A DNA stretch of 64,000 nt from Blastocladiella emersonii ATCC 22665 (GCA_025594325.1 JANHCV010000001.1:3658001-3722000); one strand, 5' to 3'; positions 18,268 through 47,082 are shown, counted from the stretch's first letter. A program made the numbers and translations. The notes: generated from the sequence alone by a model not told the origin.

Positions 18268-21200
18268 ATGTCGGAGAAGGAGCGGAAAGATAAGGACGAC
18301 GGGGAGACGCCGCAGCTGGTCGTCGACCCCCGTCTCGAGTTCTTCTGCGAGCCGCTCGTGCGCATCCTCAAGGTCAAGAGCGACAAGTGGAAGAAGACGA
18401 CTACGGTTCCCGAGTTCTGGTACGCCCGCCGCTCGCGGCCGATACGATGGCCACCGCGGAACTGACACGTCCCGTCCCGCGCCCGCCGTGTAGCGAGGTC
18501 ATGACCAAGTTCCTCGACGACCCGCTGATCGCGTGCCTGTTCTTCACGCTCAACGCGCGCGACGAGATCGTGCCCTTCATTGCCGGCTCGCCGTCGTTCC
18601 CGAACGTGCTCAAGAAGAAGGTCATCTACTTCCTCAAGCTGTCGATCCTCGCCGGCACCCCGCTCGAGGGCGCCATCAGCAAGGACCGCCTCGACAAGGA
18701 GTTTGTCATCGGCGACCTCGCCAGCAACCCGCTCGAGTTCCTCAGCACCATCCTCGAGGACGTGTACCTGCCGATTCTCAGCAACAAGAGCAACCTCGAG
18801 GGCTGGCCCGAGGTCGTGGCCAACGATGTTCTGCGCCTGCTTCGGAGCTGCCAGGGCAACGTGTTTGTCACCAACGGCCTCATCAAGGTACGCTATCGCG
18901 CTGCTGCTCGGTGTCACTCGCCCGGCCCACATCACTCACCGCGTCCATCTCGCACGATTCTAGGGCAAGACCATGCTCCCGCTGCCACAAGGCGCCGACT
19001 CGGACGCAACGCCGACCGAGGCCAAGGGCACGCTGCACGCGCTCGAGACGGCCGTCATGGACTGGTCGCACCAGGCCCAGAAGGTGCTCCAGTCGTCGTC
19101 GTCGACGCCGCTCGACGAGGGCAAGAACCCCGGCCCGTCGGTCGAGATCGAGTTCTGGCAGGCCCGCGCCGCCAACCTCAAGGGCATCCACGAGCAGCTG
19201 CACGGGTCCAAGATCTCCAAGATCGGCAAGCTCCTCAAGGAGACCCAGAGCAGCTACTACTCGGCCTTCACGGGCATTCTCGAGGACGTGACGCTCGGTA
19301 CGCATTCGCTTTCGTGAGCTTCGGCCATGGTCACCGCGCTAACTTTCGCAAATCATCGTAGCGCTCGACGAGGCCAGCGACATCTCGCTCTACCTCCAGA
19401 CGCTGCGGCCGCACGTCGAGAAGCTGTCGCAGGGCGGTGACCTCAACGAGCTGGTGCAGTGCATCGTGCCGCTTTTCCACACGATCCTGCTGATCTGGCA
19501 GAACTCGCAGCACTACAACACGTCGCAGCGGCTGACGGTGCTGCTGCGCGAGATCGCCAACGACATTGTCGAGCAGGCGCGCGGGTACATGTCCAACGAG
19601 CTGTTCGCCATTGACCCCGAGGAGGCCATGGAGAAGGTCCGCAACACGGCCAAGTTCTGCGACACGTTCCGCGAGGTGTTCCACGCGTACCGCGCGCGCG
19701 TCGCCGACTCGCCGCGCCCGTGGAACTTTGACGCCAAGATGGTGTTCGGCCGGCTCGACCGGTTCTCGGACCGCGTCCGCACCATTGGCGAGCTGTTCGA
19801 GACCATCATCGAGTTCATGCGCCTCGAGAAGATCGAGGTCGGCGGCACCAAGGGCAAGATCCTGTCGTCGCAGGTCGTGACCATCTTCAACGAGTTCTCC
19901 AACGCCATGATGACGTTCAAGAACATCAAGTACGACATCCTGTCCATCAGCCCCACGGCCGAGGCGCCGACCGACGAGGAGCGCAAGTTCTCGGACGACG
20001 TGCGCCGCCTGCACGAGATTGTCGAGGATCTCGACCGTCGCATCGGGTACGCTACTTTTAAGGAGTGATTGATGTATCACGACTAACCGCCGCTTCACCC
20101 TTTGTAGAACGATCCTGTGCCAGGCTTTCGACGACTGCTCGGGCATCACAGCGTGCTTCCGGCTGCTCGAGTCGTTCTCGGGCCTGCTCAACCGCAAGGT
20201 GATCCAGAACGATTTCGCCAACAAGTACCTCGAGCTGATCAAGCTCATGATCCAGGAGCTCGAGGACGTGGCCTTCATCTTCGCGTCGGGCAAGGACTGT
20301 CCGCCGATCCACTACAACCTCGCGCCCGTGACGGGCACGCTCATGTGGTGCCAGGAGCTACGCGAGCGCATCGACCGCGCCTTCTTCAAGCTGCAGTCGC
20401 TCAACCACCCGTCGTGGGAGTCGGAGGAGGCCAACCTGATGCGCGCCAAACACACGGCGCTCATGAAGGACATATCCGAGTTCGAGGAGGCCACCTTCAC
20501 CACGTGGACCTCGTCCATCATCGACGACTCGGAGGCCAACCTGTCCAAGCCGCTGCTCGTGCGCCTGCCCGACACGACGGGCAACGGCGGCAACCTGCAG
20601 GTCAACTTCGACCCCAAGGTCGTGGCGCTGCTGCGCGAGGTCAAGTACTTCGAGTCGTACCTCAAGAAGCCCGCCGGCAAGGCCGAGGAGGGCGGCGCGG
20701 CCGCGCTCGCGTTCCAGCTGCCCGACAAGGCCGAGAACATCTACAAGAACGGCGAGACGCTGCGCGCGTTTGTCGAGCAGCTCAACCACATCACGGGCCT
20801 GTACAACACGGTCATGGAGACGGCGCTCGAGGTCGAGCGGCCGCTGATCCAGGCCACGATCCAGGACATCGACGAGTTTGTCGACAGCGCGCTTTCGACG
20901 CTCAACTGGCGCAGCGAGGAGGTCGGGCCCTACGTCCGCGAGCTCGCCGGCAAGGTCACGACGCTGTCGCAGACGCTCAACCTCATCAAGTCCAACGTGG
21001 CGAAAATGATCGACATCATGAAGCAGTGGTGCAACAACCCGCTCATCGAGCGCAAGGACAACAAGAAGCCGCTCAACGTCGAGGAGGTGGCGCCCAAGCT
21101 CAAGGTCGCGTACGAGAACATCCGCCAGGACGGGCTGCGCATCGTCACGCTGCTCGAGGAGTCGCGCGTCGCGCTGGCCGCCGACAAGAACGCCGAGAGC

Positions 21201-24200
21201 TGGCAGCGGTACCTGCGGTACATCGACGACCTGGTCAAGGAGGGCTTCACCAACATGATCCGCCTGTCGCTGCGGTACCTGCTCGACAACACGGACGCGG
21301 CGTACCTCAAGTCCAACGACATGCCGCCGCTGCTCGAGGCCAAGCTCGAGCTGCAGACGACGCACCTCGTGTTCACGCCGAGCATGGAGGACGAGGCCGA
21401 CAACTCGGTCCTCCACATCTCGCAGGACCTGCTCAACGGCATCTACAACATCTCGACCCTCATGGAACGTATCTACCAGGACCCGTCGATCCCCATGGCC
21501 CCGCGCAGCCGCACCGCGCTCGGCGGCGGTGGCGGTGCCGACGACGCGGACCCGCTGTCCGAGTCGGGTAACGGCGCCGGTCTCGGTGAGAGCTCGGCCT
21601 CGGCCACCTCGGCCGCCGCCGGCGGCGATGCCGCATCCGTGTCCGGCGACGCGCAGCCCGGTGACGCGGGCCACGGCGACGAGGGCGAGATGGGCGAGCT
21701 GTCCGCCGTGGACGGCGACGCGTACCAGGTCGACGAGAACCACTACCTCAGCGAGATGACGGCCAACGACGAGCTCTCGGACATGAAGGACGACGTGAGC
21801 TTCCGGGTGCGCAAGATTATGGAGGAGTGCATCGCGTACCGCGAGTCGTACGACCAGTTTTCGTACCTGTGGACCGAGAACCGCAACGAGTACATGGAGC
21901 GGTTCCTCAGCGAGCAGTCGGGCGACAAGAAGGACGGCGCGGCCGGCGGCGCTGACGAGGACGGCGCGCACGACTCGGAGGCCGACGCCGACGCCAAGGA
22001 CACGAGCCACGACTTCAAGGGCAGCGTGACGACCAACCCGCAGCAGCTCGAGAAGTTTGACTCGGAGATCAAGAAGTTCGAGGGCATCCACAAGAAGATC
22101 ATGGCCCTCGACCCCGACGTCGGGTTCTCCGGCTGGTTCAAGGTCGACGTGCGCCCGCTCAAGCAGGCGCTGAACCTCAACGTCAAGAAGTGGAGCTACA
22201 CGCTGACCAAGTACCTCCTCGACGACGCCGTCAACACGCTGAGCGACCTGTCCAAGTTCATCAAGTCGACGCAGGACGGGCTCGGCATCAAGATCGTCGA
22301 GGGCGACTACGAATCGCTCGTGCACGCCATGAACCTGCTGCACGCCGTCAAGCAGCGCACGCAGACGACCGACAACATGTTCGACCCGATGCGCAAGACG
22401 GTCAACATGCTCAAGCAGTTCGGCGTCGAGCTGCCCGACGAGTCGGTCAAGCTGCTCAACGACCTGCCCGAGAAGTGGTCCGACATGAAGAAGATGGCCA
22501 CGGCGGTCCGCGACCACGTCGCACCGCTGCAGTCGATCGAGGTCGACTCGCTGCAGAAGAAGTGCAACAAGTTCGAGATGAAGGTGCACGAGTTCCGCGA
22601 GGACTTCCGCAAGAAGGCGCCGTTCCGGTTCGAGGTCGGCCCGCTGCAGGCGTACCTGCTGCTCGATGCGGTCCACGGCGACGTGACCAACATGGAGCAG
22701 GAGCACGCGGCCATCAAGAAGTCGAGCGAGATCTTCGAGATCAACCTCCCGCACTTCAAGCAGCTCGGCGACTGCCGCCGCGACATCGGCATGCTCAAGC
22801 AGGTGTGGGACGTGGTCGGCCTCGTCACGTTCATGTTCGAGGAGTGGCGCACCACGCTGTGGACCGAGATCGACGTGGACGTCATGGACGGCAAGTGCCG
22901 CGACCTGGCCAAGGAGCTGCGCCGCATGGACAAGGAGATCAAGGGCTGGGACGTGTACTCGGGCCTCGACCAGATGGTCAAGGACATGATCACGTCGCTC
23001 CGCGCCGTCGGTGAGCTGCGCAGCAGCGCGATCCGCGACCGCCACTGGAAGCAGCTCATGAAGACCACGGGCGTGTCGTTTGTCCTGACCAACGACCTCA
23101 AGTTCCAGGACCTGCTGAGCCTCCAGCTCCACAAGTACGAGGACGACGTCAAGGCCATCGTCGACCGCGCCACCAAGGAGCTGTCCATGGAGAAGGTGCT
23201 CAACGAGCTGACCAAGACGTGGACGGCCATGGAGTTCAGCTACGAGATCCACGAGTCGACGGGCACGCCGCTGCTCAAGACGTCCGAGGAGCTCATCGAG
23301 ACGCTCGAGGACAACCAGGTCATGCTGCAGAACATGATGACGTCGAAATACGTCAGCTACTTCCTCGACCAGATCACCAAGTGGCAGAACACGCTCGGCA
23401 CGGTCGACTCGGTCACGTCGCTGTGGAACGAGGTGCAGACGACGTGGTCGCACCTCGAGTCTATCTTCATCGGCTCCGAGGATATCCGCGCGCAGCTGCC
23501 CGAGGACTCGAAGCGCTTCGACGAGATCGACAAGACGTACAAGACGCTCATGGCCGAGGCGTCCAAGACGCCCAAGGCCGTGGACGCGTGTACGCGCGAG
23601 GGCCTGTTCGAGCTGCTCGAAAAGCTGCAGGGCCAGCTGTCGCTGTGTGAGAAGTCGCTCGCCGAGTACCTCGAGACCAAGCGGCTCGCGTTCCCGCGCT
23701 TCTACTTCGTGTCGGGCTCGGACCTGCTCGACATCCTCGCCAAGGGCAACCGGCCGCAGGCCGTGGCCGTGCACCTGTCCAAGCTGTTCGACAACATGGC
23801 CCGGCTCGAGTTTGCGCAGGGCCCGAACGGCGAGGTGACCAAGACGGCCATCGGCATGTACTCCAAGGAGGACGAGTACGTCAAGTTCCCCGAGGTGTGC
23901 GAGTGCACGGGCCCCGTCGAGGTGTGGCTCAACCGCGTCGAGGCGACCATGAAGAACTCGCTGCGCACGCTGCTCTCGGACGCGGTCGTCACGTACGAGG
24001 AGAAGCCGCGTGAGCAGTGGATCTTCGACTACCCGGCGCAGGTGACGCTCGCCGGCACGCAGATCTGGTGGACGACCGAGGTCAACGTCGCGTTCGGCCG
24101 GCTCGAGGAGGGCTACGAGAACTCGATCAAGGACTACTACAAGAAGCAGTGCGCCCAGCTCACGGCCCTCATCACGCTCATCCAGGGCCAGCTGTCGTCG

Positions 24201-27200
24201 GCCGACCGCCAGATGATCATGGCCGTGTGCACCCTCGACGTGCACGCGCGAGACATCGTGGCCAAGCTGATCGGCGAGAAGGCCGAGAACGCGCAGTGCT
24301 TCAGTTGGCAGTCGCAGCTGCGCCTGCGGTGGGACGACATCGAGAACGACTGCTTCGCCAACATCTGCGACGCCAAGTTCCGCTACAACTACGAGTACCT
24401 CGGCAACACGCCGCGACTCGTCGTCACCTCGCTCACCGATCGCTGCTACATCACGCTCACGCAGTCGCTCCATCTCATCATGGGCGGCGCGCCCGCGGGC
24501 CCAGCTGGAACGGGCAAGACCGAGACGACCAAGGATCTCGGCAAGGCGCTCGGCATCATGGTCTACGTGTTCAACTGCTCGGACCAGATGGACTACAAGT
24601 CGGTCGGCAACATCTACAAGGGCCTCGCGCAGTCGGGCACCTGGGGCTGCTTCGACGAGTTCAACCGCATCGCCGTCGAGGTGCTGTCCGTGATCGCGAC
24701 CCAGGTCAAGTCGATCCAGGACGCGCTCAAAGCCAAGAAGAAGCGCTTCCTGTTCCAGGGCGAGGAGATCCGCATCCAGTCGACGGTCGGCATCTTCATC
24801 ACCATGAACCCCGGCTACGCTGGTCGTGCCGAGCTGCCCGACAACCTCAAGGCGCTGTTCCGCCCGTGCTCCATGGTCGTGCCCAACCTCGAGCTCATCA
24901 TGGAAATCATGCTCATGGCCGAGGGCTTCGTCGAGGCCGGCATCCTCGCGCGCAAGTTCAACACCATGTACAAGCTCAACCGCGAGCTGCTGTCGAAGCA
25001 GGACCACTACGATTGGGGTCTCCGCGCCATCAAGTCGGTCCTCGTCGTGGCCGGCTCGCTCAAGCGCGCCGAGCCGAACCTGCCCGAGGAGCACGTTCTC
25101 ATGCGCGCGCTCCGCGACTTCAACATCCCCAAGATCGTCACCGACGACGTGCAGGTGTTCATGGGTCTGATCAGCGATCTGTTCCCCAAGATCGAGGTTG
25201 CGCGCAAGCGCAGCGAGGTGTTCGAGTCCGAGATCCGCAAGGCCACGCTCGAGAACGGGTTGCAGGTCGAGGAGAACTTCATCCTCAAGGTCGTGCAGAC
25301 CGAGGAGCTGCTCGTCGTGCGTCACTGCGTGTTCCTGATCGGCAACGCGGCCACGGGCAAGTCGCAGATCTGGAAGACGCTCGCCCGCACGTACAACAAC
25401 ATGGGCCGCAAGTGCACGTTCGCCGACCTCGACCCCAAGGCCGTGACTACGGACGACCTGTTCGGGTTCATCAACCCGTCGACGCGCGAGTGGAAGGACG
25501 GGCTCTTCTCGTCGCTCATGCGCGACTTTGCCAACATGCCCGGCACCGACCCGAAGTGGATCGTCCTCGACGGCGATATCGATCCCGGATGGATTGAGTC
25601 GCTCAACACGGTCATGGACGACAACAAGGTGCTGACGCTCGCGTCCAACGAGCGCATTCCGCTCAAGCCGCACATGCGACTCATCTTCGAGATCGGAGAC
25701 CTCAAGTACGCGACGCCGGCCACGGTCTCGCGCGCCGGTATCCTGTACGTCAACCCGACGGATCTCGGGTGGTCGCCGTACGTGCAGTCGTGGCTCGAGA
25801 AGCGCGAGGACGCGGCCGAGAAGAGCACGCTCATGGTGCTGTTCGAGCGCTACGTCAACCCGTGCCTCGACGTGCTGCGCAGCGGCAAGTTCAAGATGGC
25901 CTCGGTCGAGGACTTCTCCATGGTCCAGACGCTGTGCAGCATCCTCGAGGCCCTGCTCACGCCGCAGAACACGCCCAAGGGGTGCGACAAGGAGTGGTTC
26001 GAGATCTACTTTGTGTTCGCCGCCGTGTGGTCGTTTGGCGGCGCGCTGTTCCTCGACCAGCTCATCGACTACCGCAACGAGTTCTCTAAGTGGTGGAACC
26101 AGGAGTTCAAGACGGTCAAGTTCCCGCCCAACGGGACCGTGTTCGACTACTACGTCGACGCCGAGACCAAGCGGTTCCTGCCGTGGACGGACCGCGTGCC
26201 CAAGTTCGAGTTCGACCCGGACGTGCCGCTGCAGAGCGTGCTCGTGCACACGCCCGAGACGACGCGCGTGCGGTACCTGCTCGACCTGCTCGCCGACAAC
26301 GGCAAGCCCGTGCTCCTCGTCGGCACGGCCGGGTGCGGCAAGACCGTGCTCATGCAGGACAAGCTCCTGAGCTACGGCGAGGACCGCATGATCGTGAACA
26401 TCCCGTTCAACTTCTACACGTCGGCGTGGTCGCTCCAGCCCGTGCTCGAGAAGCCGCTCGAGAAGAAGGCCGGTCGCAACTTTGGCCCGCCGGGCACCAA
26501 GAAGCTCATCTACTTTGTCGACGATCTCAACATGCCCGAGGTCGACAAGTACGGCACCGTATCGCCGCACTCGCTGCTGCGCCAGCACCTCGACTACCGC
26601 CACTGGTACGACCGCCAGAAGCTCACGCTCAAGGAGATCCACAACTGCCAGTACGTGGCGTGCATGAACCCGACGGCCGGCAACTTCACCATCACGTCGC
26701 GCCTGCAGCGGCACTTCTCCGTGTTCTCGGTCAACTTCCCCGGCGTCGACTCGCTCCAGTCCATCTACAACTCGATTCTGCAGGGCCACCTCGGCCACAT
26801 GTCGGTGGCCGTGCAGAAGGCCGGCGAGAAGCTCGTGGCGGCGTCGCTCGCGCTGCACAAGAAGGTGGCCTCGACGTTCCTGCCGACCGCGGTCAAGTTC
26901 CACTACATCTTCAACCTGCGCGACCTGTCGAACATCTTCCAGGGCGTGCTGTTCGCGCAAAAGGACGTGCTCAAGGAGCCCGTCGAGCTCGTGCGCCTGT
27001 GGATCCACGAGACGACGCGCGTGTACGGCGACAAGCTCATCGACGTGGTCGACAACCAGGCGCTGTCGGCCATGCAGCGCGAGTTCGCCAAGAAGAACTT
27101 TGAGGACCAGGACCAGAACGTCATTTTCGCCGAGCCGCTCATCTACACACATTTTGCCGGCGGCATCGGCGAGCCCAAGTACTGCGGCGCCAAGGACTGG

Positions 27201-30200
27201 CCCTCGCTCAAGAAGATTCTCGAGGAGGCGCTCGACCAGTACAACGAGGTGAACGCAGCCATGGACCTCGTGCTGTTCGAGGACGCCATCTTCCACATCT
27301 CGCGCATCAGCCGCATCCTCGAGTCGCCGCGCGGTAACGCGCTGCTCGTCGGTGTCGGTGGTTCGGGCAAGCAGTCGCTCGCGCGTCTCGCGTCGTCCAT
27401 GTCGTCGATGAGCGTGTTCCAGATAACGCTGCGCAAGGGCTACGGCATCGCCGATCTCAAGACGGATCTGTGCGGGTTGTACATCAAGACGGGCCAGAAG
27501 AAGCAGCAGATTATGTTCCTCGTCGCCGACTCGCAGGTGGCCGACGAGAAGTTCCTCGTCCTGATCAACGACCTGCTCGCGTCGGGCAACATCCCGCAGC
27601 TGTTCCCCGACGACGAGGTCGAGAACATCATCAACTCGATGCGCAACGAGGTCAAGGCGCTCGGTCTCGTGGACACGCGCGAGGCGTGCTGGGACCAGTT
27701 TATCAACAATGTCCGCCGCAACCTCAAGGTCGTGCTCTGCTTCTCGCCCGTCGGCAACACGCTGCGCTCGCGGTGCCGCAAGTTCCCGGCCATCGTCAAC
27801 TCGACGCAGATCGACTGGTTCCGCGAGTGGCCGCTCGAGGCGCTCGAGTCGGTGGCCACGCGCTTCATCGACAGCTGCGAGCTCGTGCCCAAGGAGCACA
27901 AGAAGTCGGTGACGCGGTTCATGGCGTTCGCGCACCAGATCGTCAACGACGTGAGCAAGAAGTACCTCATCAACGAGAAGCGGTACAACTACACGACGCC
28001 CAAGAGTTTCCTCGAGCTCATCAACCTGTACAAGGCCATGCTCGAGAAGAAGTCCAACGAGCTCATGCGGTCCATGGAGCGCCTCGAGAACGGCCTGACC
28101 AAGCTCGAGTCGACGGCCGCGCAGGTCGACGACCTCAAGGCCAAGCTGGCCACGCAGGAGGTCGAGCTCAAGGCTAAGAACGAGGAGGCCGAGCGGCTCA
28201 TCGAGCGCGTCGGCATCGACACCGAGAAGGTGAACAAGGAGAAGGGCATCGCCGACGCCGAGGAGCGCAAGGTCGCCGAGTTCACCAAGGAGGTCGAGGA
28301 GAAGCAGCGCCAGTGTCAAGAGGACCTGCGCGCTGCCGAACCTGCGCTCGCTGCCGCCGCCAACGCCCTCAACACGCTCAACAAGGCCAACTTGACCGAG
28401 CTCAAGTCGTTCGGTTCGCCGTCGGCCGAGGTCGTGGACACGGTGGCCGCCGTCATGGTCCTCATGTCGCCCGCCGGCAAGATCGCCAAGGACCGCAGCT
28501 GGAAGGCCGGCAAGAACATGATGGCCAAGGTCGACGCCTTCCTCGAGTCGCTCATCACCTTCAACAAGGAGAAGATTGACCAGTCGAACCTCGACGCGCT
28601 CGAGCCGTACCTCAAAAACGAGAACTTCAACGAGGAGTTCATGAAGTCCAAGTCGATTGCCGCCGCCGGTCTCTGCTCGTGGGTCGTGAACGTTGTCAGT
28701 TACTACCACGTGTACTGTGACGTCGAGCCCAAGCGCAAGGCCCTCGAGACGGCCACGGTCGAGCTCGCGGCCGCCCAGGCCAAGCTGGCCGACATCAAGG
28801 CCAAGATCGCCGAGCTCGACAGCAACCTGGCCACGCTCAAGGCGCAGTTCGAGAAGGCCACGGCCGACAAGCTCCGATGCGAGGAGGAGGCGCGCGCGAC
28901 GCAGGAGACGATCGTGCTCGCCAACCGTCTCGTCGGCGGTCTCGCGTCCGAGAAGGTCCGCTGGAGCGAGGCCGTCGCCCGGTTCCGCGAGCAGCAGAAG
29001 ACGCTCGCCGGTGATGTGCTGCTCGCATCGGCGTTCATCTCGTACGTCGGGTGCTTCAGCAAGCGGTACCGCACCGAGCTCATCGAGGAGAAGTGGATGC
29101 CGTACCTCAAGGACCCGACCACGGGCCTGCCCATGTCCGAGAACCTCGACCCGCTCGACATCCTCACCAACAGCGCCGAGATTGCGCGGTGGAACAACGA
29201 GGGCCTGCCGACGGATCGGGTCTCGCTCGAGAACGCGACCATGGTCACCAACTGCAAGCGCTGGCCGCTCATCATCGACCCGCAGCTGCAAGGCGTCAAG
29301 TGGATCAAGAGCCGGGAGGGCCCGAACCTCAAGATCGTGCGGCTCGGCCAGCGCGGCTACCTCGACATCATCGAGAAGGCCGTCTCGGCCGGCGACGCGT
29401 GCCTCATCGAGGATCTCGGCACGAGCATCGACGCTGTGCTCGACCACATCATCGGTCGCAACACAATCAAGAAGGGCAAGGCCATCAAGATCGGTGACCG
29501 CGAGATCGAGTACGACCCGAACTTCAAGCTCATCCTGCAGACGCGCCTGCCCAACCCGCACTACCCGCCCGAGATCCAGGCGCAAACGACGCTTGTCAAC
29601 TTCACGGTCACCATCTCGGGTCTCGAGGACCAGCTGCTCGCCGACGTCGTCAAGGCCGAGCGGCCCGACCTCGAGGAGACCAAGGCCGAGCTGACCAAGC
29701 AGCAGAACGAGTTCAAGATTAAGCTGACGGAACTCGAAGACGCGCTGCTCTCGCGCCTGTCGTCGGCGCAGGGCAACTTCCTCGGCGACTACGCGCTGGT
29801 CGAGAACCTCGAGACCACGAAGCGCACGGCGACCGAGATCGAGGTCAAGGTCGAGGAGGCCAAGAAGACGGAGAAGCGCATCAACGAGACGCGCGAGCTG
29901 TACCGCCCCGTGGCCGCGCGCTCGTCGCTGCTCTACTTCCTGCTCAACGACCTGTGGCAGATCCACCCCATGTACCAGTACTCGCTCAACGCGTACAAGG
30001 TGGTCTTCCAGCGCGCCATCCAGACGGCCGAGGCGTCCGAGGACATCAAGGAGCGCGTCATGGCCCTGATCGACAACATCACGCACCGGACGTACCTGTA
30101 CACGACGCGTGGTCTGTTCGAGCGCGACAAGCTCATCTTCGCGGCGCAGATGACGTTCCAGATCCTGCTCGGCCAGGGCGACATTGACCCGCAGGAGCTC

Positions 30201-32336
30201 GACTTCTTGCTCCGCGCGCCCAAGGTGTTCGGCGTCAACTCGCCCGCCGAGTGGCTCGCCACGTCGTCGTGGCAGACGATCAAGGCGCTGTCGAACCTCG
30301 AGCCGTTTCGCCTGCTGCCCAACGACATCGAGGGCAGTAGCAAGCGCTGGAAAAAGTACTGCGAGTCCGAGGCGCCCGAGAACGAGAACCTGCCCGCCGA
30401 GTGGAAGAGCAAGACGCCGATGCAGAAGCTGTGCATCCTGCGCGCGCTGCGGCCCGACCGCATGTCGTACGCGGTCCGCGGGTTCATCGGGCTCAAGATG
30501 GGCCCCAAGTACATCGACTCGTCGCGCATCCCGCTCACGCGCACGTACGAGGAGACGTCGAACATCACACCCGTCTTCTTCATCTTGTCGCCCGGTGTGG
30601 ACCCCGTCAAGGAAGTCGAGGCGGTCGGCCGCACGCAGGGCGTGGCCGAGGATCTCGGCAACTTCCACAACGTGTCGCTCGGCCAGGGCCAGGAGGTGAT
30701 CGCCGAGCAGAAGCTCGACATTGCGCACCACAACGGCGGCTGGGTCATGCTCCAGAACATCCACCTGGTCGCCAAGTGGCTGCCGCTGCTCGACAAGAAG
30801 CTCGAGGCGCTCATGCAGGACGCGCACCCGTCGTTCCGCGTGTTCCTCTCGGCCGAGCCGGCGGGCGACCCGGCGTACCACATCATCCCGACGTCGATTC
30901 TGCAGGCCTCGATCAAGATCACCAACGAGCCGCCGACGGGCATGAACGCCAACCTGCACCGCGCGCTCGACAACTTCAACCAGGAGACGCTCGAGCGGTG
31001 CTCCAAGGAGGCCGAGTTCAAGGGCATCCTGTTCGCGCTGTGCTACTTCCACGCTGTGGTCCTCGAGCGGCGCAAGTTCGGCACGCAGGGGTGGAACCGC
31101 TCGTACCCGTTCAGCACCGGCGACCTGACCATTTCCGTCGACGTGCTGTACAACTACCTCGAGGCGTGGTCCAAGGTGCCGTGGACCGACCTGCGGTACA
31201 TGTTCGGCGAGATCATGTACGGCGGCCACATCTCGGACGACTGGGACCGGCGCCTGTGCACGTCGTACCTCGAGGTGTACATTCGCGAGGACCTGTTCGA
31301 GGGCGGGTTCGAGCTCGCGCCCGGGTTCGCCGCGCCGCCCAGTCTCGACTACAAGGAGTACCACCGGTACATCGACGAGGTGCTGCCGCCCGAGTCGCCG
31401 TACCTGTACGGCCTGCACCCGAACGCGGAAATCGGCGTCCTGACCAAGATGGCCGAGAAGCTGTTCAAGACGCTGCTCGAGATGCAGCCGCAGGACGCGG
31501 CGGCGGGCATGGCGGTCAGCAAGGAGGAGAAGGTCAAGGCGACGGTCGACGAGATCATGGGCTCACTGCCCGACCCGTTCAACGTGCCCGAGCTCATGTC
31601 GCGCGTCGAGGAGCGGACGCCGTTCATCTCGGTGGCGCTGCAGGAGTGTGACCGCATGTCGATCCTCACCACCGAGATCCGCCGCTCGCTCAAGGAGCTC
31701 GACCTCGGTCTCAAGGGTGACCTGACCATCACCGAGGCCATGGAGGCGCTCATGAACGCCATCTTCTTCGGCTCGATTCCGGCGTCGTGGGAGAAGCTCG
31801 CGTACCCGTCGCTCAACCAGTTTGCGGCGTGGTACGCCGACCTGCTGCAGCGCATCAAGGAGCTCGAGCAGTGGGTCGCCGAGTTCCAGCTGCCCGCGGT
31901 GGTGTGGCTGCCCGGGCTGTTCAACCCGCAGTCGTTCCTCACGGCCATCATGCAGACGACGGCGCGCAAGAACGAGTGGCCGCTCGACCGCATGGTGCTC
32001 ACGGTCGAGGTGCTCAAGAAGCCCAAGGAGGAGTGCACGGCGCCGCCCCGCGAGGGTGCCTACATCCACGGGCTGTTCATGGAGGGCGCGCGGTGGGACA
32101 GCAACACGGGCTGCATCGCCGACTCGTTCCTCAAGGAGCTCACGCCCACGATGCCGGTCATCTTCGTCAAGGCGATCCCCGTCGACAAGCGCGAGACCAA
32201 GGGCATCTACGAGTGCCCCGTGTTCCGCACGCGCCAGCGCGGGCCGACCTACGTCTGGACCTTCAACCTCAAGACCAAGGAGGCGCCGGCCAAGTGGGCG
32301 CTGTGCGGCGTCGCCCTGCTGCTGTCGGCCGAGTAG
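18268..32336 (+). CDS. Axonemal outer-arm dynein heavy chain, beta type (DNAH9/11/17, ODA4-like); exons 18268-18419, 18494-18887, 18964-19297, 19362-20046, 20108-32336 (~4,597 aa)
   Basis: Four P-loops (GPAGTGKT, GNAATGKS, GTAGCGKT, GVGGSGKQ); CFDEFNR, FITMNPGYAGR, DHYDWGLRAIKSVL; stalk and MTBD; C-terminal YECPVFRTRQRG...W; N-terminal DPRLEFF...LKVKSDKW typical of the beta outer-arm class. Four GTACGC introns keep the frame. Confidence 0.96.
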
Positions 32337-40586: not shown

Positions 40587-40787
40587 GTAGAGAGAGAGTT
40601 GCTGTTGTGTAATATCGTTTGAACATATAGTTAGTTTTTATCTAGTCCATTTCCGACTTGCCATGCATCATCTTTTACTCGATCAAAATCGGCCGTCCAC
40701 ACGCTGCCTCGACTCGCGAGCAGAAGACCTCGGGCGTCATTCCTACACGTACGAGTGCAGTTTGTGAGCCACGCGGCTATCGCGATG

Positions 40788-43700
40788 TCATGGCGAGTGC
40801 ATCGTACCTCGAGGAACAGAGACCACGAGCTTGGCCAGCGGCGCCTCGCCATCGACGGGCGAGAGGTAAATGGCGACCGCGGACTGCGCCATGAGCTGGG
40901 CCTCGAGCAGCGGCTCGCCCATGCTCTCCTCGTTGCTGCACGCGAGGTAGTAGAAGACGTTCCCGAGGCGCGTGTGCCAGATCCCGCGGCGCACGGCCGA
41001 GGCGCCGCACACGACCGACACGGCGGGCAGCGGCGCGTGATGCTCGACAATCGACGGGATGGCGGCGGCGGACGGCGCGGTCACGAACGTCGCGTCGCTG
41101 CCGGGACGCACAGACAGATCGTCCTCGCTCGCACCAATCTCGCCGACTTCGTCGTCCTCGTCCATGACCGAGGAGCCGCTGCCGCCGCCGCTGTAGTAGC
41201 TGGCCTCGGCGCCGAACCGGCGGAGCGTGCGCGACCCGGACCACGCGAGCCACTCGAGCTCGCGATGCAGGTACCGCTGCGCGTCGACGGGCCGGACCTG
41301 GATCCCGGTGATGCGGCTGAGCGGGACCGTGGCCGTGGTGCGCTTCGCGTTGGCGGTGGCCGCGGACCCGACCGTCACCGCGGCCGGCCAGAGCCCGGGG
41401 CCCGCCGGGTTCGCCTCGAAGTGCATCGAGTTGGCCTTGAGGATGATGGCGAGCGCGTCCTGGCCCGTGAGGTGCTGCGGGGGCTGCGGGCCAGCAGCGA
41501 GCGCGAGCGTCGACGACAGCGAGCCGCCGCTCGACGGGAGGTCCTTGGACGCCGGGTGCGGCTGCTCGGACAGCGGCACGTCCCACGAGTCCCACGACGC
41601 GAGCCGGTGCGGCCCGGTGCCGACGAGGAGCACGTCGACGAGCAGGTCGAGCTTGGCGGCGAGCACCTGCTCGAGCGTCAGCAGCTCGAGGTCGTGTGCC
41701 GCGAGCCCGGTGCGCTTGGTAACCTGGAACCAGTGGCGCATCTGCAGGTACGGGCTCGACAGCGCGTACAGCACCGGCCAGTGGATCCCGAGCACCGCAG
41801 CCTCGGCGTAGACGGCAGCGACCACGTCGGGCGCCGCGTCGTCGGCGCCGAAAATGGCCGACAGCTGCCGCAGCTCCTCGCGCCACCGGCAGAGCGTCGG
41901 ACCGATGGCGTCGCGCGGGAGAGTCATGAAGAACATGTGTTTCCAGTCGTGCAGAGTCGTCTGGATCGTGATGGCCGTGTTCCACAGCCGCTCGCGCCGC
42001 GCGACGGCGGCCTTGAGATCGCGGATCTCGGGCCACTCCTTGGGCGTTGGATCGCCGTCGAAAGTGCCGACGTGAAGGTGCGTCTGCAGCGCCGTCGCGG
42101 TGGCAATGTCCTGCTCGAGCCGAGTGACGCGCGCGGCCAGTGCGCCGACACGGCGCCCCATGTTGGGCGCGGCCTTGGCGTGGCGCTCCTGCGCGAGTTC
42201 GGCCAGCTCGGCAAAGTGGGCGTGGAGGCTGAGCGAAATGTGGTCCGTGAGGACGGCGAGCCGGGCGACGTAGTCGGCGCGGGCGCGCTGGAGCGATTCG
42301 TCGGCGACCTCGTACTCGCACACGAGCTGGCGGTGCGTGCGCACGACGGTCCAGTACGCGCGCGACTGGTCGTCGGTCAGCTCGATCTCGTGCGCGTAGC
42401 ACACGTCCCACCACCGCTGCAGGACCGCCGTGGTTGACTTGACGTCGGCCAGGACGGCGGGACGCGAGGCGAGGGCGGCGGCGAGCGCGGACCACTCCTT
42501 GGGGTCGGCCCCGATGCTCGGCGAGCTGAGGTCGGCGACGGTCGACTGGGCCACGGACGCGAGCTGCTGCGAGCCCGTCTCGAAGACGTGAACGAGCTCG
42601 GCGAGAACATGCGCGTGCCAGTCGCGCCAGCACCCGCGAAGTTGCCGAACCACCTGGCCGACGCGCACGGCGAACGGGCTGTCGGCGACCGGGACGAGCG
42701 AGTCCATGGAGAAGAGCCGCTCGCGCACCGCCATCAGCGAGGCCAATCGCTGGTCGACGCGATCGAGCGTCGCGATGCCCGAGATCGAGTCTGCAGCGCT
42801 CGAGGGAGACTCGAGGAGCCACAACCACTGCTGAATCTCGTCGAGCAGCACGTTACACCGGCGGTACCCGCGCGCCGCTGCGGCGAGGACTGTGTCGGCG
42901 GAGGGAACGGGCAGGCTGGAGCTTGCTTCCGCGTCCTTGGACGCGTGGAAGGGCCGCCAATCAGAGAGGAAGCCGGCCGTCGAGTGGATCATCTCGCTGA
43001 AGAGCTGGTTGACCATGTCCAGCGGCGGGCTGAACGCGAGCTGGCCGTACTCGTCGAGGACCAGCTCAATAGACATGGCGGCCGTCGGTGCGGCCACGTC
43101 CCCGCGATCGAGACGGTTGAGGAAAAAGTCGGAGAGATGCGCGTGGAAGCCCTCGATGAGGCGGCGAAACTCGGTGTCGACGATGCAGTCGGCGAGGCGC
43201 AGCAGGCGCGTGTAGACGTGGCCGAGACACGGAATGACGGACAGCGCGCGCATGGCACCGGCGCGCCACTCGGACTTGAGCGCGTGGTCGAGGCAGGTGA
43301 GGTGCGCCGAGACGCGCTCGTAGACGCGTTCCACGGGCAGCAGGGCGGGTGTCGAGCTGGATGTCGAGGACGGGCTCGTCGCGCGGCGGCAGACGGGCGA
43401 GTGATCGGCACGAGCGTGGAGATCGGGAAACGCAATGTACTCGTCGATGACACGGACGAGCGAGGCGCGGATCTGGGCGAGCGCCGACCACGCGCGGGGC
43501 CGAGCCACGACACACTCGTCGGGGCGGAGCATGTTGCCGAGCGGGCAGTCCTTGCGCAGGTTCTGCAGCCACAGGGTGCGCTCGTCGATGGCGGTCGAGT
43601 CGTCGGGCGTCGCGCCGTGGAGCAGGTGCTGCTTGCTCGCAAACGACCAGTGCCAGCGGTACGCCTGCAGCGACGGCTCCCACGCCTCGTCGTCCGGGCG

Positions 43701-44819
43701 GCGGCCGCGCCACGGGCTCGTCGCGAGCCGCTGGAGGAAGCGCGACTCAAACTCAGCCGGCAGCCGCGGGGCGTCCGAGCAGATCGACGCGACCGCGTGC
43801 CACGTCTCGACATGCTCGATCCACGCGTGGTGCTGCTGCCACGCCGCCGCGCGTCGCAGGTCGAAGTGGACGGGGTCCTCGGCGTCGAAGCGCAGGTTGA
43901 GCCGCGTCACCCATTTGCGCTCGGCTGGCGCGTGGTGCCACTGGATGAGAAGCCGTTTGGTCGACAGGTCGTACGAGAGGACGGTACACGCGAGCCATTC
44001 CCGCGTCCACGTCGGTGAGTCGGACAGCTGGTACTGTGAAGTTGCGTTGGGACCGTCGATCCGCTGCGCGGGCCAAGCGGGGAGGTGAAGTGAGTGGTCG
44101 GGCGGCGTGGTCCATGGAGCTCGCGGCGGGTTCGGGTCGTCGAAGAAGTCGAGTGGAAAGTGTGCGACGGGAGCAAGCGCGGCGGTCAGGGTCGAGTCGA
44201 GATCGGGTGCTGGCAGCGGGTAGAATTGCCGGGGTTCTAGCGGCCGCGAATCGCCACCAGGTTCGACGGGCTCGCACTTGATTTCGAAGAGCGGGACGAC
44301 CGAGTCTGACGAGGGGGATCGGTCGAGTGGGGTGCTTGCTCCGGCAGCCGGTGCGAGCGACGCGATCTGCGGGCTCGGCGAGGACGATGGCGGGTCAAGA
44401 CAAGCTCGCACTGCGGGAGCTTCGACTGCCGCCTCGGCGACCATCTCTTCGAGCACGACAGGATCGAGTCCAACGTCGCCGAGCTCGTTCCACCATGACG
44501 GAAGCTGCGACGGGATGAACTCGGACCCTCCGATACGGCTGCGCCGGGCCGAGCTTGGCCGTGAAGTCGCCGCAGGATTTGAGGGAGCGGACCCCGGCCG
44601 TGACACGGCGTTGAACCGCGTCGTCGCTGGCGGCTTTGCTGTCCGAGTCGCCGCCGATGGGGCTGAGTGTGGCAGGGTTGATTTTGTAAGAGTCTCGGTG
44701 GCCTTTTTGGTCTTCTTTGCGGACGAGGGGACCGCCGCCGAGCGCGGCCGTGTCGACGAAGAGGCAGGGCGAGTAGTCTTCATTGGAGATTCATTTGATA
44801 TCGGATGCCTTCGTTGCAC
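40788..44819 (-). CDS. Dynein heavy-chain tail-like protein without a motor domain (1,343 aa, apparently intronless)
   Basis: WLACTVLSYDLSTK...WVTRLNLRFDAEDP resembles the DNAH1-type inner-arm N-terminus; IELVLDEYGQLAFSPPLD and LWNTA...PVLYALSSPYLQMRHWFQVTKRTG resemble tail and DHC_N2 motifs; no P-loop anywhere. ATG at 44819. Confidence 0.65.
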   Translation of the reverse strand: MQRRHPISNESPMKTTRPASSSTRPRSAAVPSSAKKTKKATETLTKSTLPHSAPSAATRTAKPPATTRFNAVSRPGSAPSNPAATSRPSSARRSRIGGSEFIPSQLPSWWNELGDVGLDPVVLEEMVAEAAVEAPAVRACLDPPSSSPSPQIASLAPAAGASTPLDRSPSSDSVVPLFEIKCEPVEPGGDSRPLEPRQFYPLPAPDLDSTLTAALAPVAHFPLDFFDDPNPPRAPWTTPPDHSLHLPAWPAQRIDGPNATSQYQLSDSPTWTREWLACTVLSYDLSTKRLLIQWHHAPAERKWVTRLNLRFDAEDPVHFDLRRAAAWQQHHAWIEHVETWHAVASICSDAPRLPAEFESRFLQRLATSPWRGRRPDDEAWEPSLQAYRWHWSFASKQHLLHGATPDDSTAIDERTLWLQNLRKDCPLGNMLRPDECVVARPRAWSALAQIRASLVRVIDEYIAFPDLHARADHSPVCRRATSPSSTSSSTPALLPVERVYERVSAHLTCLDHALKSEWRAGAMRALSVIPCLGHVYTRLLRLADCIVDTEFRRLIEGFHAHLSDFFLNRLDRGDVAAPTAAMSIELVLDEYGQLAFSPPLDMVNQLFSEMIHSTAGFLSDWRPFHASKDAEASSSLPVPSADTVLAAAARGYRRCNVLLDEIQQWLWLLESPSSAADSISGIATLDRVDQRLASLMAVRERLFSMDSLVPVADSPFAVRVGQVVRQLRGCWRDWHAHVLAELVHVFETGSQQLASVAQSTVADLSSPSIGADPKEWSALAAALASRPAVLADVKSTTAVLQRWWDVCYAHEIELTDDQSRAYWTVVRTHRQLVCEYEVADESLQRARADYVARLAVLTDHISLSLHAHFAELAELAQERHAKAAPNMGRRVGALAARVTRLEQDIATATALQTHLHVGTFDGDPTPKEWPEIRDLKAAVARRERLWNTAITIQTTLHDWKHMFFMTLPRDAIGPTLCRWREELRQLSAIFGADDAAPDVVAAVYAEAAVLGIHWPVLYALSSPYLQMRHWFQVTKRTGLAAHDLELLTLEQVLAAKLDLLVDVLLVGTGPHRLASWDSWDVPLSEQPHPASKDLPSSGGSLSSTLALAAGPQPPQHLTGQDALAIILKANSMHFEANPAGPGLWPAAVTVGSAATANAKRTTATVPLSRITGIQVRPVDAQRYLHRELEWLAWSGSRTLRRFGAEASYYSGGGSGSSVMDEDDEVGEIGASEDDLSVRPGSDATFVTAPSAAAIPSIVEHHAPLPAVSVVCGASAVRRGIWHTRLGNVFYYLACSNEESMGEPLLEAQLMAQSAVAIYLSPVDGEAPLAKLVVSVPRGTMHSP

Positions 44820-45732: not shown

Positions 45733-46005
45733 GTGTCTTGGTGGCTTCGTCCGTTGTAATATAATCTTTCGTCCTGATGGTCGCTGTGATCCGAGGCGGA
45801 GCGCGCCGCTGAAGTCGCGGCGCAGAACGTGGCGCCGCCTTGCGGCTTGCTCGCCGTTTTGTCGGCTCGCTGGTCGGCGCCGTTCCCCAACCGGGGCCCT
45901 GTCCCCGTCGCCTTCGCTCTCTCCCGCCGACCATTCCACGTAACGGCCTGCGATTAAACCAGCGCATCCCACCTGGTGCATTCCTGTCAAAAACTACGCA
46001 TCACC

Positions 46006-47082
46006 ATGACGACCAACAACGCGCCTGCGCCGACGACGACGGGCGAGCGCCGGCTCAAGATCGACCTGCACACGCACATCCTGCCCGAGCGGTGGCCCGA
46101 CCTCAAGCGCAAGTACGGTTACGGCGAGTGGGTGCAGCTGGACCACTCGGACCCAACGCTGGTGCCGGGCAAGGAGGCGGACATGATGCAGGGCGGCAAG
46201 TTCTTCCGGCGGGTGCAGTGCAACTGCTGGTCGCCCGAGGCGCGCATTGCCGAGTGCGACGCGACGACGGTCGACGTGCAGGTCCTGTCGACGGTGCCCG
46301 TCATGTTCGCGTACTGGGCCAAGCCCGAGGACACGCTCGACCTGGCCCGCTATCTCAACGACCACATTGCGCAGTGCGTCGCCGAGGACCCGAAGCGGTT
46401 CGTCGGCCTCGGCACCATCCCGCTGCAGGCGCCCGACCTCGCCGTCGCCGAGATGAAGCGGTGCGTGCAGGAGCTCGGCCTGCGCGGCATCCAGATCGGG
46501 TCGCACATCGGCGAGTGGAACCTCGACGCGCCCGAGCTCGACGCCGTGTGGCGCGCCGCCGAGGAGCTCGGCGTTGCCATCTTTGTACACCCGTGGAACG
46601 ACGCGTGGGAGACGCCCGCGCGCCAGAAGCCGTACTGGGGCGCGTGGCTCGTCGGCATGCCGTGCGAGACCACCCAGGCCATCTGCTCGGTCACCATGGG
46701 CGGCGTCCTCGACCGCTTCCCCAAGCTCAAGATGTGCTTTGCCCACGGCGGCGGGTCCTTCCTCGCCACGCTGGGCCGCATTGACCATGGGTTCAACGTG
46801 CGCCCGGACCTCTGTGCGACCCGCGTCAAGCACCCGCCGTCCCACTACCTGGACCGCATCTACATCGACTCGCTCGTCCACGACCTCGACACGCTCAAGT
46901 TCGTCATCAACAAGATCGGCCACGACCACATCATGCTCGGGTCCGACTACCCGTTCCCGCTCGGCGAGCACCACCCGGGCAAGATGGTCGAGGAGAGCGA
47001 CCTGCCCGACGAGACCAAGGACGCCATCCTGTGGAAGACGGCCTCCGAGTTCCTCGGCCTCGACCCCAAGGATTTCATGTAA
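46006..47082 (+). CDS. ACMSD: 2-amino-3-carboxymuconate-6-semialdehyde decarboxylase (amidohydrolase_2), 358 aa
   Basis: KIDLHTHILPERWPDLKRKYGYG, VQVLSTVPVMFAYWAK, IFVHPW, WLVGMPCETT, FAHGGGSF, IYIDSLVHD, MLGSDYPFPLGE. Confidence 0.95.
   Translation: MTTNNAPAPTTTGERRLKIDLHTHILPERWPDLKRKYGYGEWVQLDHSDPTLVPGKEADMMQGGKFFRRVQCNCWSPEARIAECDATTVDVQVLSTVPVMFAYWAKPEDTLDLARYLNDHIAQCVAEDPKRFVGLGTIPLQAPDLAVAEMKRCVQELGLRGIQIGSHIGEWNLDAPELDAVWRAAEELGVAIFVHPWNDAWETPARQKPYWGAWLVGMPCETTQAICSVTMGGVLDRFPKLKMCFAHGGGSFLATLGRIDHGFNVRPDLCATRVKHPPSHYLDRIYIDSLVHDLDTLKFVINKIGHDHIMLGSDYPFPLGEHHPGKMVEESDLPDETKDAILWKTASEFLGLDPKDFM

What the first reader, a model, noticed from the sequence alone, without database searches (positions are those of the whole stretch)
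40788..44819. Motor-less inner-arm dynein heavy chain: tail domains only, ending in an unrelated C-terminal domain
Seen: after a Ser/Pro-rich leader come WLACTVLSYDLSTKRLLI...WVTRLNLRFDAEDPVHFDLRRAAA (about 43990-43850), then IELVLDEYGQLAFSPPLD, a coiled-coil-like helical region, and LWNTAITIQ...PVLYALSSPYLQMRHWFQVTKRTG...LTLEQVL (about 41990-41660). The last motif mirrors RAVGELRSSAIRDRHWKQLMKTTG in the full dynein in this same window. About 290 further residues follow with no P-loop, and the stop lies ~200 bp from the convergent UTP20 stop, so no AAA ring can follow. Established: DNAH1-type inner-arm dyneins carry a WVPRxxLLFxAEDP N-terminal motif, and RHW marks the start of DHC_N2. Inference: a truncated dynein paralogue that keeps its axoneme-docking and light-chain-binding tail and may act as a structural spacer, a dominant-negative regulator or a cargo adaptor. 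The ORF is long and intact, so it does not look like a decaying pseudogene.
Basis: partly seen in the sequence, partly recalled or inferred. Interest (0 to 1): 0.7.

Follow-up and report, generated by a model that had tools for sequence, protein, structure and literature searches.

The report
Motor-less dynein heavy chain, PH-like end
This water mould gene encodes the anchoring tail of a flagellar inner-arm dynein with the whole motor replaced by a small PH-like domain; it is conserved and under purifying selection in several related genera, so it is a working gene and not a wreck.

Summary
Window 40675-44783 (-) of Blastocladiella emersonii encodes H9P43_001398. It has an inner-arm-type dynein tail and only the first 126 of 403 DHC_N2 linker positions. 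About 290 residues without a P-loop follow. The true start is probably upstream of NCBI's.

It is not a pseudogene, a split gene or a misassembly:
- Colinear motor-less orthologues of 1000-1282 aa exist in B. britannica, Catenaria, Allomyces (four copies), Coelomomyces and one unidentified contig.
- Allomyces copies give dN/dS 0.13-0.16, and 0.03-0.10 in the linker stub and second half of the C-terminal domain.
- All 11 motors in the genome pair with their own linker.

The nearest relatives are a divergent full-length dynein family of chytrids. Its AAA1 Walker B acidic pair is lost in all 12 members mapped. A tail tree places the motor-less clade beside the full-length, degenerate-motor gene of Sorochytrium. 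This suggests one motor loss inside Blastocladiomycota.

The C-terminal domain is found only in this clade and models as a split PH-like fold (modest Z).

Axonemal docking is inferred, not shown. No RNA run was listed. The scan had not found this before on other DNA.

The parts
40675..44783 (-). Whole gene (H9P43_001398): exon 1 at 40808-44783 (NCBI starts it at 44444), intron, and last exon with stop TAA at 40675-40677
   Evidence: ORF and translation. The NCBI model P0001 is 100% identical. Exon mapping. GC3 is 0.85-0.98 from ORF codon 250 to the end.
44490..44546 (-). Conserved leader motif (basic stretch, then S-E/K/Q-F-I/V-P ... W) inside the Ser/Pro-rich leader, upstream of the NCBI start
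   Evidence: Shared with B. britannica P0002, JGI P0004 and unannotated Catenaria DNA. GC3 here is only 0.62-0.76.
43815..44057 (-). N-terminal inner-arm-type domain (W..C.V..D ... KWV.R.NL ... AEDP)
   Evidence: Aligned to 9e5c_6e residues 187-257. Independent hits to the N-termini of full-length dyneins (P0020, P0036, P0052). Also present in Catenaria and Allomyces genomic DNA.
42021..43814 (-). Helical tail region homologous to single-headed inner-arm dynein tails
   Evidence: The family profile aligns colinearly to DNAH1 residues 243-1113 and 9e5c_6e residues 134-994. Divergent fungal dyneins match query positions 608-906 at E about 1e-20.
41646..42020 (-). Linker stub: first 126 of 403 positions of DHC_N2. 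This is the most conserved block of the protein.
   Evidence: Pfam hit at E 6e-9 to 7e-10. Mean identity to five orthologues is 0.60-0.66. dN/dS is 0.03-0.06 in Allomyces.
41493..41645 (-). Variable connector where dynein homology ends
   Evidence: Identity is low (0.22-0.36) and the alignment is gappy. The profile match to full-length relatives stops here.
41220..41492 (-). C-terminal domain, first half (four strands and a helix), holding the TIP..RI..IQ.RPPD..RYL.RE.EW motif
   Evidence: AlphaFold2 model with a 7-row alignment gives pLDDT 79-93 over the motif. Invariant columns.
41025..41219 (-). Disordered, poorly conserved insert that splits the C-terminal domain
   Evidence: pLDDT is below 50 over model residues 87-163. 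Identity is 0.05-0.14.
40808..41024 (-). C-terminal domain, second half (VRRGIWHT..GNVFYY hairpin, LEAQLM helix, two strands)
   Evidence: pLDDT 79-91. Identity 0.43-0.54. dN/dS 0.04-0.10. The model's top 50 structural neighbours all share the PH superfold.
40743..40807 (-). 65-nt intron (GT..AG, length not a multiple of 3)
   Evidence: Read directly from the sequence. Exon mapping of P0001. An intron before the last 23-24 codons also occurs in all four Allomyces copies. It is absent in B. britannica and Catenaria.
40675..40742 (-). Last exon: 21 codons forming the C-terminal helix of the PH-like model, then TAA
   Evidence: The peptide is conserved in B. britannica, Catenaria, Allomyces and ENA fragment P0007. 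Helix 232-243 in the model has pLDDT about 88-90.

Best explanation
This is a functional gene for a naturally motor-less dynein heavy chain.

It descends from a divergent, DNAH1-related axonemal dynein class of zoosporic fungi. That class is probably Kollmar's class 17, which I could not verify. In the 12 chytrid members where the AAA1 site could be mapped, the Walker B acidic pair is lost, so the ATP-hydrolysis site looks degenerate.

In the ancestor of Blastocladiella, Catenaria, Allomyces and Coelomomyces, after the split from Sorochytrium, the gene was cut inside the first subdomain of the linker. It was then joined to a new domain of about 250 residues that models as a split PH-like fold.

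What is shown: the architecture, its conservation, purifying selection, the absence of any motor, and the gene's phylogenetic origin.

What is inferred: the protein still uses its inner-arm-type tail to dock on the axonemal doublet, with the usual tail partners. There it would present the conserved linker stub and PH-like module as a non-motor binding head. It would act as a structural or regulatory occupant of an inner-arm-like site, perhaps in a restricted zone of the zoospore flagellum.

My confidence is about 0.9 for the identity and evolutionary origin, and about 0.5 for axonemal docking.
For: Tail and linker-start homology.

No motor:
- No P-loop in the ORF.
- The stop lies 88 bp from the convergent UTP20 stop.
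- The genome's 11 DHC_N2 and 11 AAA_6 loci all pair with each other, and this gene is the twelfth N2.
- A search with the Sorochytrium motor finds only canonical dynein genes.
- The assembly is PacBio HiFi (PMC9730499).

Orthologues:
- They are colinear to the last residue.
- In B. britannica, Catenaria and the JGI contig, an unrelated called gene follows the stop within about 54 bp to 1.2 kb. In Allomyces the next called gene is about 3.9 kb away. No motor remnant was found in any of these loci.

Selection: dN/dS is 0.13-0.16 overall at dS 0.36-0.47. It is lowest in the linker stub and the second PH-like half.

Origin:
- The profile scores divergent fungal dyneins at 85-154 bits against 24-63 bits for canonical inner-arm dyneins.
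- In the ML tree the motor-less clade has support 100/100, its union with full-length Sorochytrium 98/91, and the split from canonical chains 98/94.
- B. emersonii has the full canonical single-headed set, including a DNAH1 orthologue, but no full-length member of the divergent class.

Motor decay in relatives.

PH-like fold.

Precedents: engineered heavy chains lacking the motor still assemble in Chlamydomonas axonemes (PMC3031465). The N-termini of inner-arm dyneins set their docking site (PMC10266980; PMC5100056).
Against: There are no expression, localisation or proteomic data. No RNA run was listed, and the genome annotation was ab initio.

Tail partners (actin, p28, centrin) were not tested.

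The tail is only 20-38% conserved among orthologues, so its docking determinants may have changed.

The PH-like assignment rests on Z 7.4 and a 7-sequence alignment. That score is within the range the tool calls common. Foldseek, Pfam and PDB sequence searches found nothing.

The canonical inner-arm set is complete, so no docking site is obviously vacant.

The tree includes long branches and rows with unusual composition.
Confidence: 0.6

Rival explanations
1. The protein is real and selected but no longer axonemal. The tail has been re-used as a cytoplasmic scaffold. It might hold dynein light chains or actin during zoospore formation, or tether a zoospore organelle or membrane through the PH-like domain.
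For: The stem branch of the motor-less clade is long (1.64 changes per column) and tail conservation is low, which fits a change of job. PH-superfold domains often bind lipids or peptides away from axonemes (neighbours listed). The leader motif was seen only in this clade among the proteins held.
Against: Every species with the gene or its full-length relatives is flagellate. The N-terminal inner-arm domain, which sets docking in canonical chains (PMC10266980), is retained in all lineages.
Confidence: 0.28
2. It acts as a competitive (dominant-negative) occupant. The tail takes the same docking site as the canonical DNAH1-type arm and so lowers the number of active motors there.
For: The tail profile aligns end to end with DNAH1 and 9e5c_6e. 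The motor of the full-length relatives is closest to DNAH1 (339 against 299 bits). A full-length DNAH1 orthologue coexists in the genome.
Against: In the tail tree the clade is sister to all canonical single-headed chains and is not nested with DNAH1. A pure competitor would not need a strongly constrained new C-terminal domain.
Confidence: 0.08
3. It is a decaying pseudogene whose frame stays open only because the GC-rich genome has few stop codons.
For: Long stop-free frames are common here, including antisense ones of 476-683 codons over this very gene.
Against: dN/dS is 0.13-0.16, and 0.03-0.10 in the two key blocks. The length and architecture are the same in at least five genera. Third-position GC periodicity is strong through to the end. 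The small terminal exon is conserved.
Confidence: 0.02
4. It is an assembly or annotation artefact, or a split gene whose motor half is encoded elsewhere.
For: Split dynein genes exist in some organisms (from my own knowledge, not checked here).
Against: The assembly is HiFi on a 5.1-Mb contig. No orphan motor exists in the genome. The truncation falls at the same point in independent genomes, each followed by different called genes and no motor remnant.
Confidence: 0.02

Closest known systems
Divergent full-length dynein heavy chains of Chytridiomycota and Sorochytrium (3900-4600 aa; probably Kollmar's class 17, PMC5100056)
   Same: The tail and linker start are homologous (85-154 bits against the family profile). 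These chains are the sister lineages in the tail tree. They show relaxed or lost motor catalysis: the AAA1 Walker B acidic pair is lost in 12 of 12 members mapped.
   Different: They keep linker, AAA ring, stalk and C-terminal domain. They lack the PH-like domain and the leader motif. I could not check their identity with class 17 because no class-17 reference sequence was at hand.
Single-headed inner-arm dynein heavy chains, DNAH1 / Chlamydomonas DHC2 type (dynein d)
   Same: The N-terminal domain and helical tail align colinearly. The motor of the full-length relatives scores best against DNAH1.
   Different: This gene has no motor at all. Identity to same-genome paralogues is only about 22-26% over short stretches. 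A canonical DNAH1 orthologue exists separately in the same genome.
Engineered motor-less I1 heavy chains in Chlamydomonas (PMC3031465)
   Same: These are tail-only heavy chains that still assemble into the axoneme with their subunits. They are the functional precedent for the proposed docking.
   Different: They are laboratory truncations of a two-headed dynein. They are not natural genes, are not conserved in evolution, and carry no new C-terminal domain.
PH-superfold domains (PH, PTB, GRAM, FERM-F3, FACT and TFIIH PH-like modules)
   Same: The best structural neighbours are Avo1 PH (Z 7.4, rmsd 2.9 over 82 residues), hSac2, the MTMR GRAM domain and Lam6. All top 50 neighbours belong to this superfold. 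Bacterial PH rows appear in the Atlas search.
   Different: There is no sequence-family match. The domain is split by a disordered insert of about 75 residues. Its ligand is unknown.

Membership tests
Dynein heavy chain (motor protein) | Tail homologous to dynein heavy chain tails | tested here: met
Dynein heavy chain (motor protein) | Complete linker (DHC_N2, 403 positions) | tested here: not met
   Only profile positions 3-126 match.
Dynein heavy chain (motor protein) | Ring of six AAA+ modules with an AAA1 P-loop, plus stalk and microtubule-binding domain | tested here: not met
   No P-loop and no AAA, MT or Dynein_C Pfam hit. The stop lies 88 bp from the neighbouring gene's stop. No orphan motor exists in the genome.
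Divergent fungal dynein class (probable class 17) | Groups with this class, not with canonical classes, in a tail phylogeny | tested here: met
   Support for the split from canonical chains is 98/94. The clade is sister to full-length Sorochytrium at 98/91. Profile scores agree.
Divergent fungal dynein class (probable class 17) | Identity of that class with Kollmar's class 17 | not testable with these tools
   No class-17 reference sequences were available. The inference rests on taxon range and on the absence of the class-10 WD40 tail.
Single-headed inner-arm dynein complex | Tail binds actin plus a p28 dimer or centrin, and docks on the A-tubule | not tested
   The genome's p28 gene has introns, so it could not be given to the tools by reference. 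No localisation data exist.
PH-domain superfold | Beta sandwich capped by a C-terminal helix | tested here: inconclusive
   The model has pTM 0.57, with ordered parts at pLDDT 79-93. All top 50 VIA-align rows are PH-like, but Z is at most 7.4. Foldseek found nothing.
PH-domain superfold | Match to a curated PH, GRAM or PTB sequence family | tested here: not met
   No Pfam family at E up to 10. No PDB sequence hit better than E 1.6.

The most novel reading that the evidence does not exclude
This is a natural, phylum-level example of a dynein heavy chain that has shed its motor and kept its address. It would be the end point of a visible series within one fungal dynein class: a catalytically dead AAA1 in chytrids, a degenerate motor in Sorochytrium, and no motor in the other blastoclads examined. 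On this reading the tail still docks at an inner-arm site of the zoospore axoneme and displays a newly acquired PH-like module in place of the motor head.
Probability: 0.45. Interest if true: 0.78.

Novelty: new variant of a known kind. Interest (0 to 1): 0.68.

Why it matters
Dynein classifications are built on motor domains, so a tail-only descendant is invisible to them. Kollmar's survey reports the extra fungal classes only for Chytridiomycota and Neocallimastigomycota.

This gene would show that a heavy-chain tail can be kept by selection for its own sake. It offers a natural experiment on what an inner-arm tail does without a head. It also gives a dated series of motor decay inside one gene family.

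The prediction is concrete and testable: a headless, tail-shaped density, or a new globular one, in the 96-nm repeat of blastoclad flagella. Chytrids should show a full head at the same place. My paper searches found no description of such a gene.

Tried and rejected
- Word-index homologue search over ORF residues 250-1343 returned only the gene itself. This was a false blank, because low-complexity words filled the candidate list. The exhaustive search found the orthologues.
- The C-terminal profile in the word index found only fragment P0007.
- Single-sequence AlphaFold2 of the C-terminus gave pLDDT 34.6 and was unusable.
- Foldseek against the PDB gave no match. The C-terminal profile against PDB sequences gave nothing. 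Pfam gave nothing. ESM feature search scored 0.81, which is a lead only, with GRAM rows.
- The RNA-run search listed none, so read laying was not used and expression stays untested.
- Complex prediction of the linker stub against the PH-like domain gave no verdict (score 0.00). This is not evidence either way.
- Split-gene idea: rejected.
- The idea that this is the DNAH1 orthologue that lost its motor: rejected, because a full-length DNAH1 orthologue exists.
- dN/dS between genera was not attempted, since about 40% protein identity means saturated synonymous sites. Allomyces copies were used instead.
- The p28 light chain could not be used as a binding partner, because its gene has introns.
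- Two genome-search runs failed for technical reasons.
- The protein starting at 44783 with the intron removed was not joined or searched as one sequence. The N-terminal extension was studied by reference only. All other searches used the stored NCBI model or the unspliced ORF by reference.
Full report
**What is there.** The window comes from Blastocladiella emersonii ATCC 22665, contig position C1:3658001-3722000. The ORF 40788-44819 (-) has 1343 codons. It corresponds to the NCBI protein H9P43_001398 (P0001, 1234 aa).

The NCBI model differs from the raw ORF at both ends.
- At the 3' end, a 65-nt GT..AG intron (40743-40807) joins a 21-codon exon that stops at 40675-40677. That peptide is conserved in orthologues. 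All four Allomyces copies have an intron before their last 23-24 codons. B. britannica and Catenaria lack it.
- At the 5' end, NCBI starts at 44444. A short leader motif upstream (44490-44546) is shared with B. britannica, a JGI contig and unannotated Catenaria DNA. The first ATG, at 44783, is therefore the likelier start.

Third-position GC is 0.85-0.98 from codon 250 to the end, including the last 290 codons. It is lower (0.62-0.76) in the leader.

**Is it dynein-derived?** Yes.
- Pfam DHC_N2 matches profile positions 3-126 of 403, above the curated cut-off.
- The PDB inner-arm chain 9e5c_6e aligns colinearly to the N-terminal motif block and to residues 773-1048.
- A profile of the family aligns to DNAH1 residues 243-1113 and to 9e5c_6e residues 134-994.
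- The N-terminal block alone hits the N-termini of several full-length dyneins.
- No P-loop exists in the protein. Nothing in Pfam matches the last 295 residues.

**Is the motor really absent?**
- The convergent UTP20 gene ends 88 bp from the stop.
- The genome has 12 DHC_N2 matches. Eleven are full length, and each lies next to one of the 11 AAA_6 (AAA1) loci. The twelfth is this gene.
- A search with the degenerate motor of the Sorochytrium relative finds only the canonical dynein genes.
- The assembly is PacBio HiFi in 21 contigs (PMC9730499).

**Is it conserved?** The exhaustive HMMER search found colinear proteins that match to their last residue:

| Source | Protein | Length | Identity |
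|---|---|---|---|
| B. britannica | P0002 | 1282 aa | 40% |
| Catenaria anguillulae | P0003 | 1000 aa (model cut short at the N-terminus) | 41% |
| Allomyces javanicus | P0005 | 1178 aa | 34% |
| Coelomomyces lativittatus | P0053 | 1089 aa | 26% |
| Unidentified JGI contig | P0004 | 1280 aa | 29% |
| ENA fragment | P0007 | 166 aa | 54% |

Allomyces macrogynus (two copies) and A. arbusculus add three more, of 1177-1178 aa. In B. britannica, Catenaria and the JGI contig, an unrelated called gene follows the stop within about 54 bp to 1.2 kb. In Allomyces the next called gene is about 3.9 kb away. tblastn with dynein motors finds no remnant downstream in any of these loci.

In Catenaria the gene lies between the orthologue of the window's outer-arm beta dynein and an Amidohydro_2 gene. 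The same neighbours occur in this window, though rearranged.

**Selection.** I used Nei-Gojobori estimates on the four Allomyces copies. Synonymous sites are unsaturated (dS 0.36-0.47).

| Region | dN/dS |
|---|---|
| Whole gene | 0.13-0.16 |
| Tail | 0.12-0.20 |
| Linker stub | 0.03-0.06 |
| Second half of the C-terminal domain | 0.04-0.10 |

Conservation across genera peaks in the same two blocks. This rules out a pseudogene.

**Origin.** B. emersonii has six heavy chains with DHC_N1 and five single-headed chains. Of the five, three are DNAH3/7/12-type, one is DNAH6 and one is a full-length DNAH1 orthologue. The window's own full dynein is outer-arm beta. So this gene is not the DNAH1 orthologue minus its motor.

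Its nearest full-length relatives are 3900-4600-aa proteins from many chytrids, plus one from the blastoclad Sorochytrium milnesiophthora.
- They are only 19-31% identical to canonical linker-AAA1 regions.
- The family profile scores them at 85-154 bits, against 24-63 bits for canonical chains.
- The Spizellomyces member keeps all motor domains at weak scores and is closest to DNAH1 (339 against 299 bits). Sorochytrium keeps only traces of the motor.
- In all 12 members that could be mapped, the AAA1 Walker B acidic pair is lost. About half have also lost Walker A.

An ML tree of the tail plus linker start (37 rows, 500 columns) gives these supports:
- the motor-less clade, 100/100;
- its union with full-length Sorochytrium, 98/91;
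- the separation of this whole group from canonical chains, 98/94.

The stem of the motor-less clade is long (1.64). Caveats are long branches and unusual composition in several rows.

Kollmar (PMC5100056) described classes 10 and 17 as confined to Chytridiomycota and Neocallimastigomycota. Class 10 carries a WD40 C-tail, which these proteins lack. Class 17 is therefore the likely name, but this is unverified.

**The C-terminal domain.** Its profile finds nothing else in the genome. It finds nothing in the full-length relatives, and only a fragment in the protein index.

With a 7-row alignment, AlphaFold2 gives pTM 0.57. The ordered parts have pLDDT 79-93. A disordered insert spans model residues 87-163. 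VIA-align against 48,161 chains returns only PH-superfold neighbours in the top 50. The best is Avo1 PH, with Z 7.4 and rmsd 2.9 over 82 residues. The Atlas search returns bacterial PH-like clusters with TM about 0.7 by target. Foldseek finds nothing. I read this as a probable split PH-like fold, at about 70%, with unknown ligand.

**How it probably works.**

Shown: a tail, a linker stub and a new domain, all under constraint, with no motor.

Inferred: the tail still docks on the axoneme. The grounds are:
- Heavy chains truncated to their tails assemble in Chlamydomonas axonemes (PMC3031465).
- The N-termini of inner-arm chains set their address (PMC10266980).
- Divergent classes are expected to sit where their tail relatives sit (PMC5100056).
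- Every species carrying the gene or its relatives is flagellate.

The stub and the PH-like module would then act as a non-motor head that binds an unknown partner. A cytoplasmic role is the main rival. The one complex prediction I ran gave no verdict. No RNA run was listed.

Noticed in passing
window 44442-44783: The NCBI model H9P43_001398 probably starts too far downstream. A leader motif conserved in three other lineages lies upstream of its ATG. The first ATG of the ORF is at 44781-44783.
   Followed up: partly
L013:7208-8081 and L014:7794-8252: The Catenaria (ORZ39342.1) and Allomyces javanicus gene models are cut short at the N-terminus. The inner-arm-type N-terminal domain, and in Catenaria the leader motif, lie in unannotated DNA just upstream.
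   Followed up: partly
P0008-P0027 (chytrid full-length dyneins), AAA1 region: A whole class of chytrid dynein heavy chains has lost the AAA1 Walker B acidic pair, and often Walker A, while keeping the overall motor architecture. This suggests a catalytically dead dynein. Sorochytrium's copy keeps only traces of the motor domains.
   Followed up: partly
window 20199-32336 (+) and L013:100-4478 (-): The window's full dynein is the outer-arm beta chain (DNAH9/17 type). Its Catenaria orthologue is 94.5% identical over 800 residues and also lies next to the motor-less gene. The linkage is conserved with rearrangement. An Amidohydro_2 gene is nearby in both (window 45976-47082).
   Followed up: partly
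window 40755-42437 (+), 42588-44018 (+), 40777-42828 (-): Stop-free frames of 476-683 codons overlap the gene on both strands. They are by-products of the extreme third-position GC and are not genes. Open frames alone mean little in this genome.
   Followed up: partly
G000:C1:4711085-4711687 (L018:1303-1905): The inner-arm light chain p28/DNALI1 gene (Ax_dynein_light, E 1.6e-49) appears to be broken by at least one intron and a frame change. A weaker second match lies at G000:C11:1410495-1410746.
   Followed up: no
Tree: B. britannica groups with Catenaria rather than with B. emersonii, at weak support (89/61). [quoted passage not shown]
   Followed up: no
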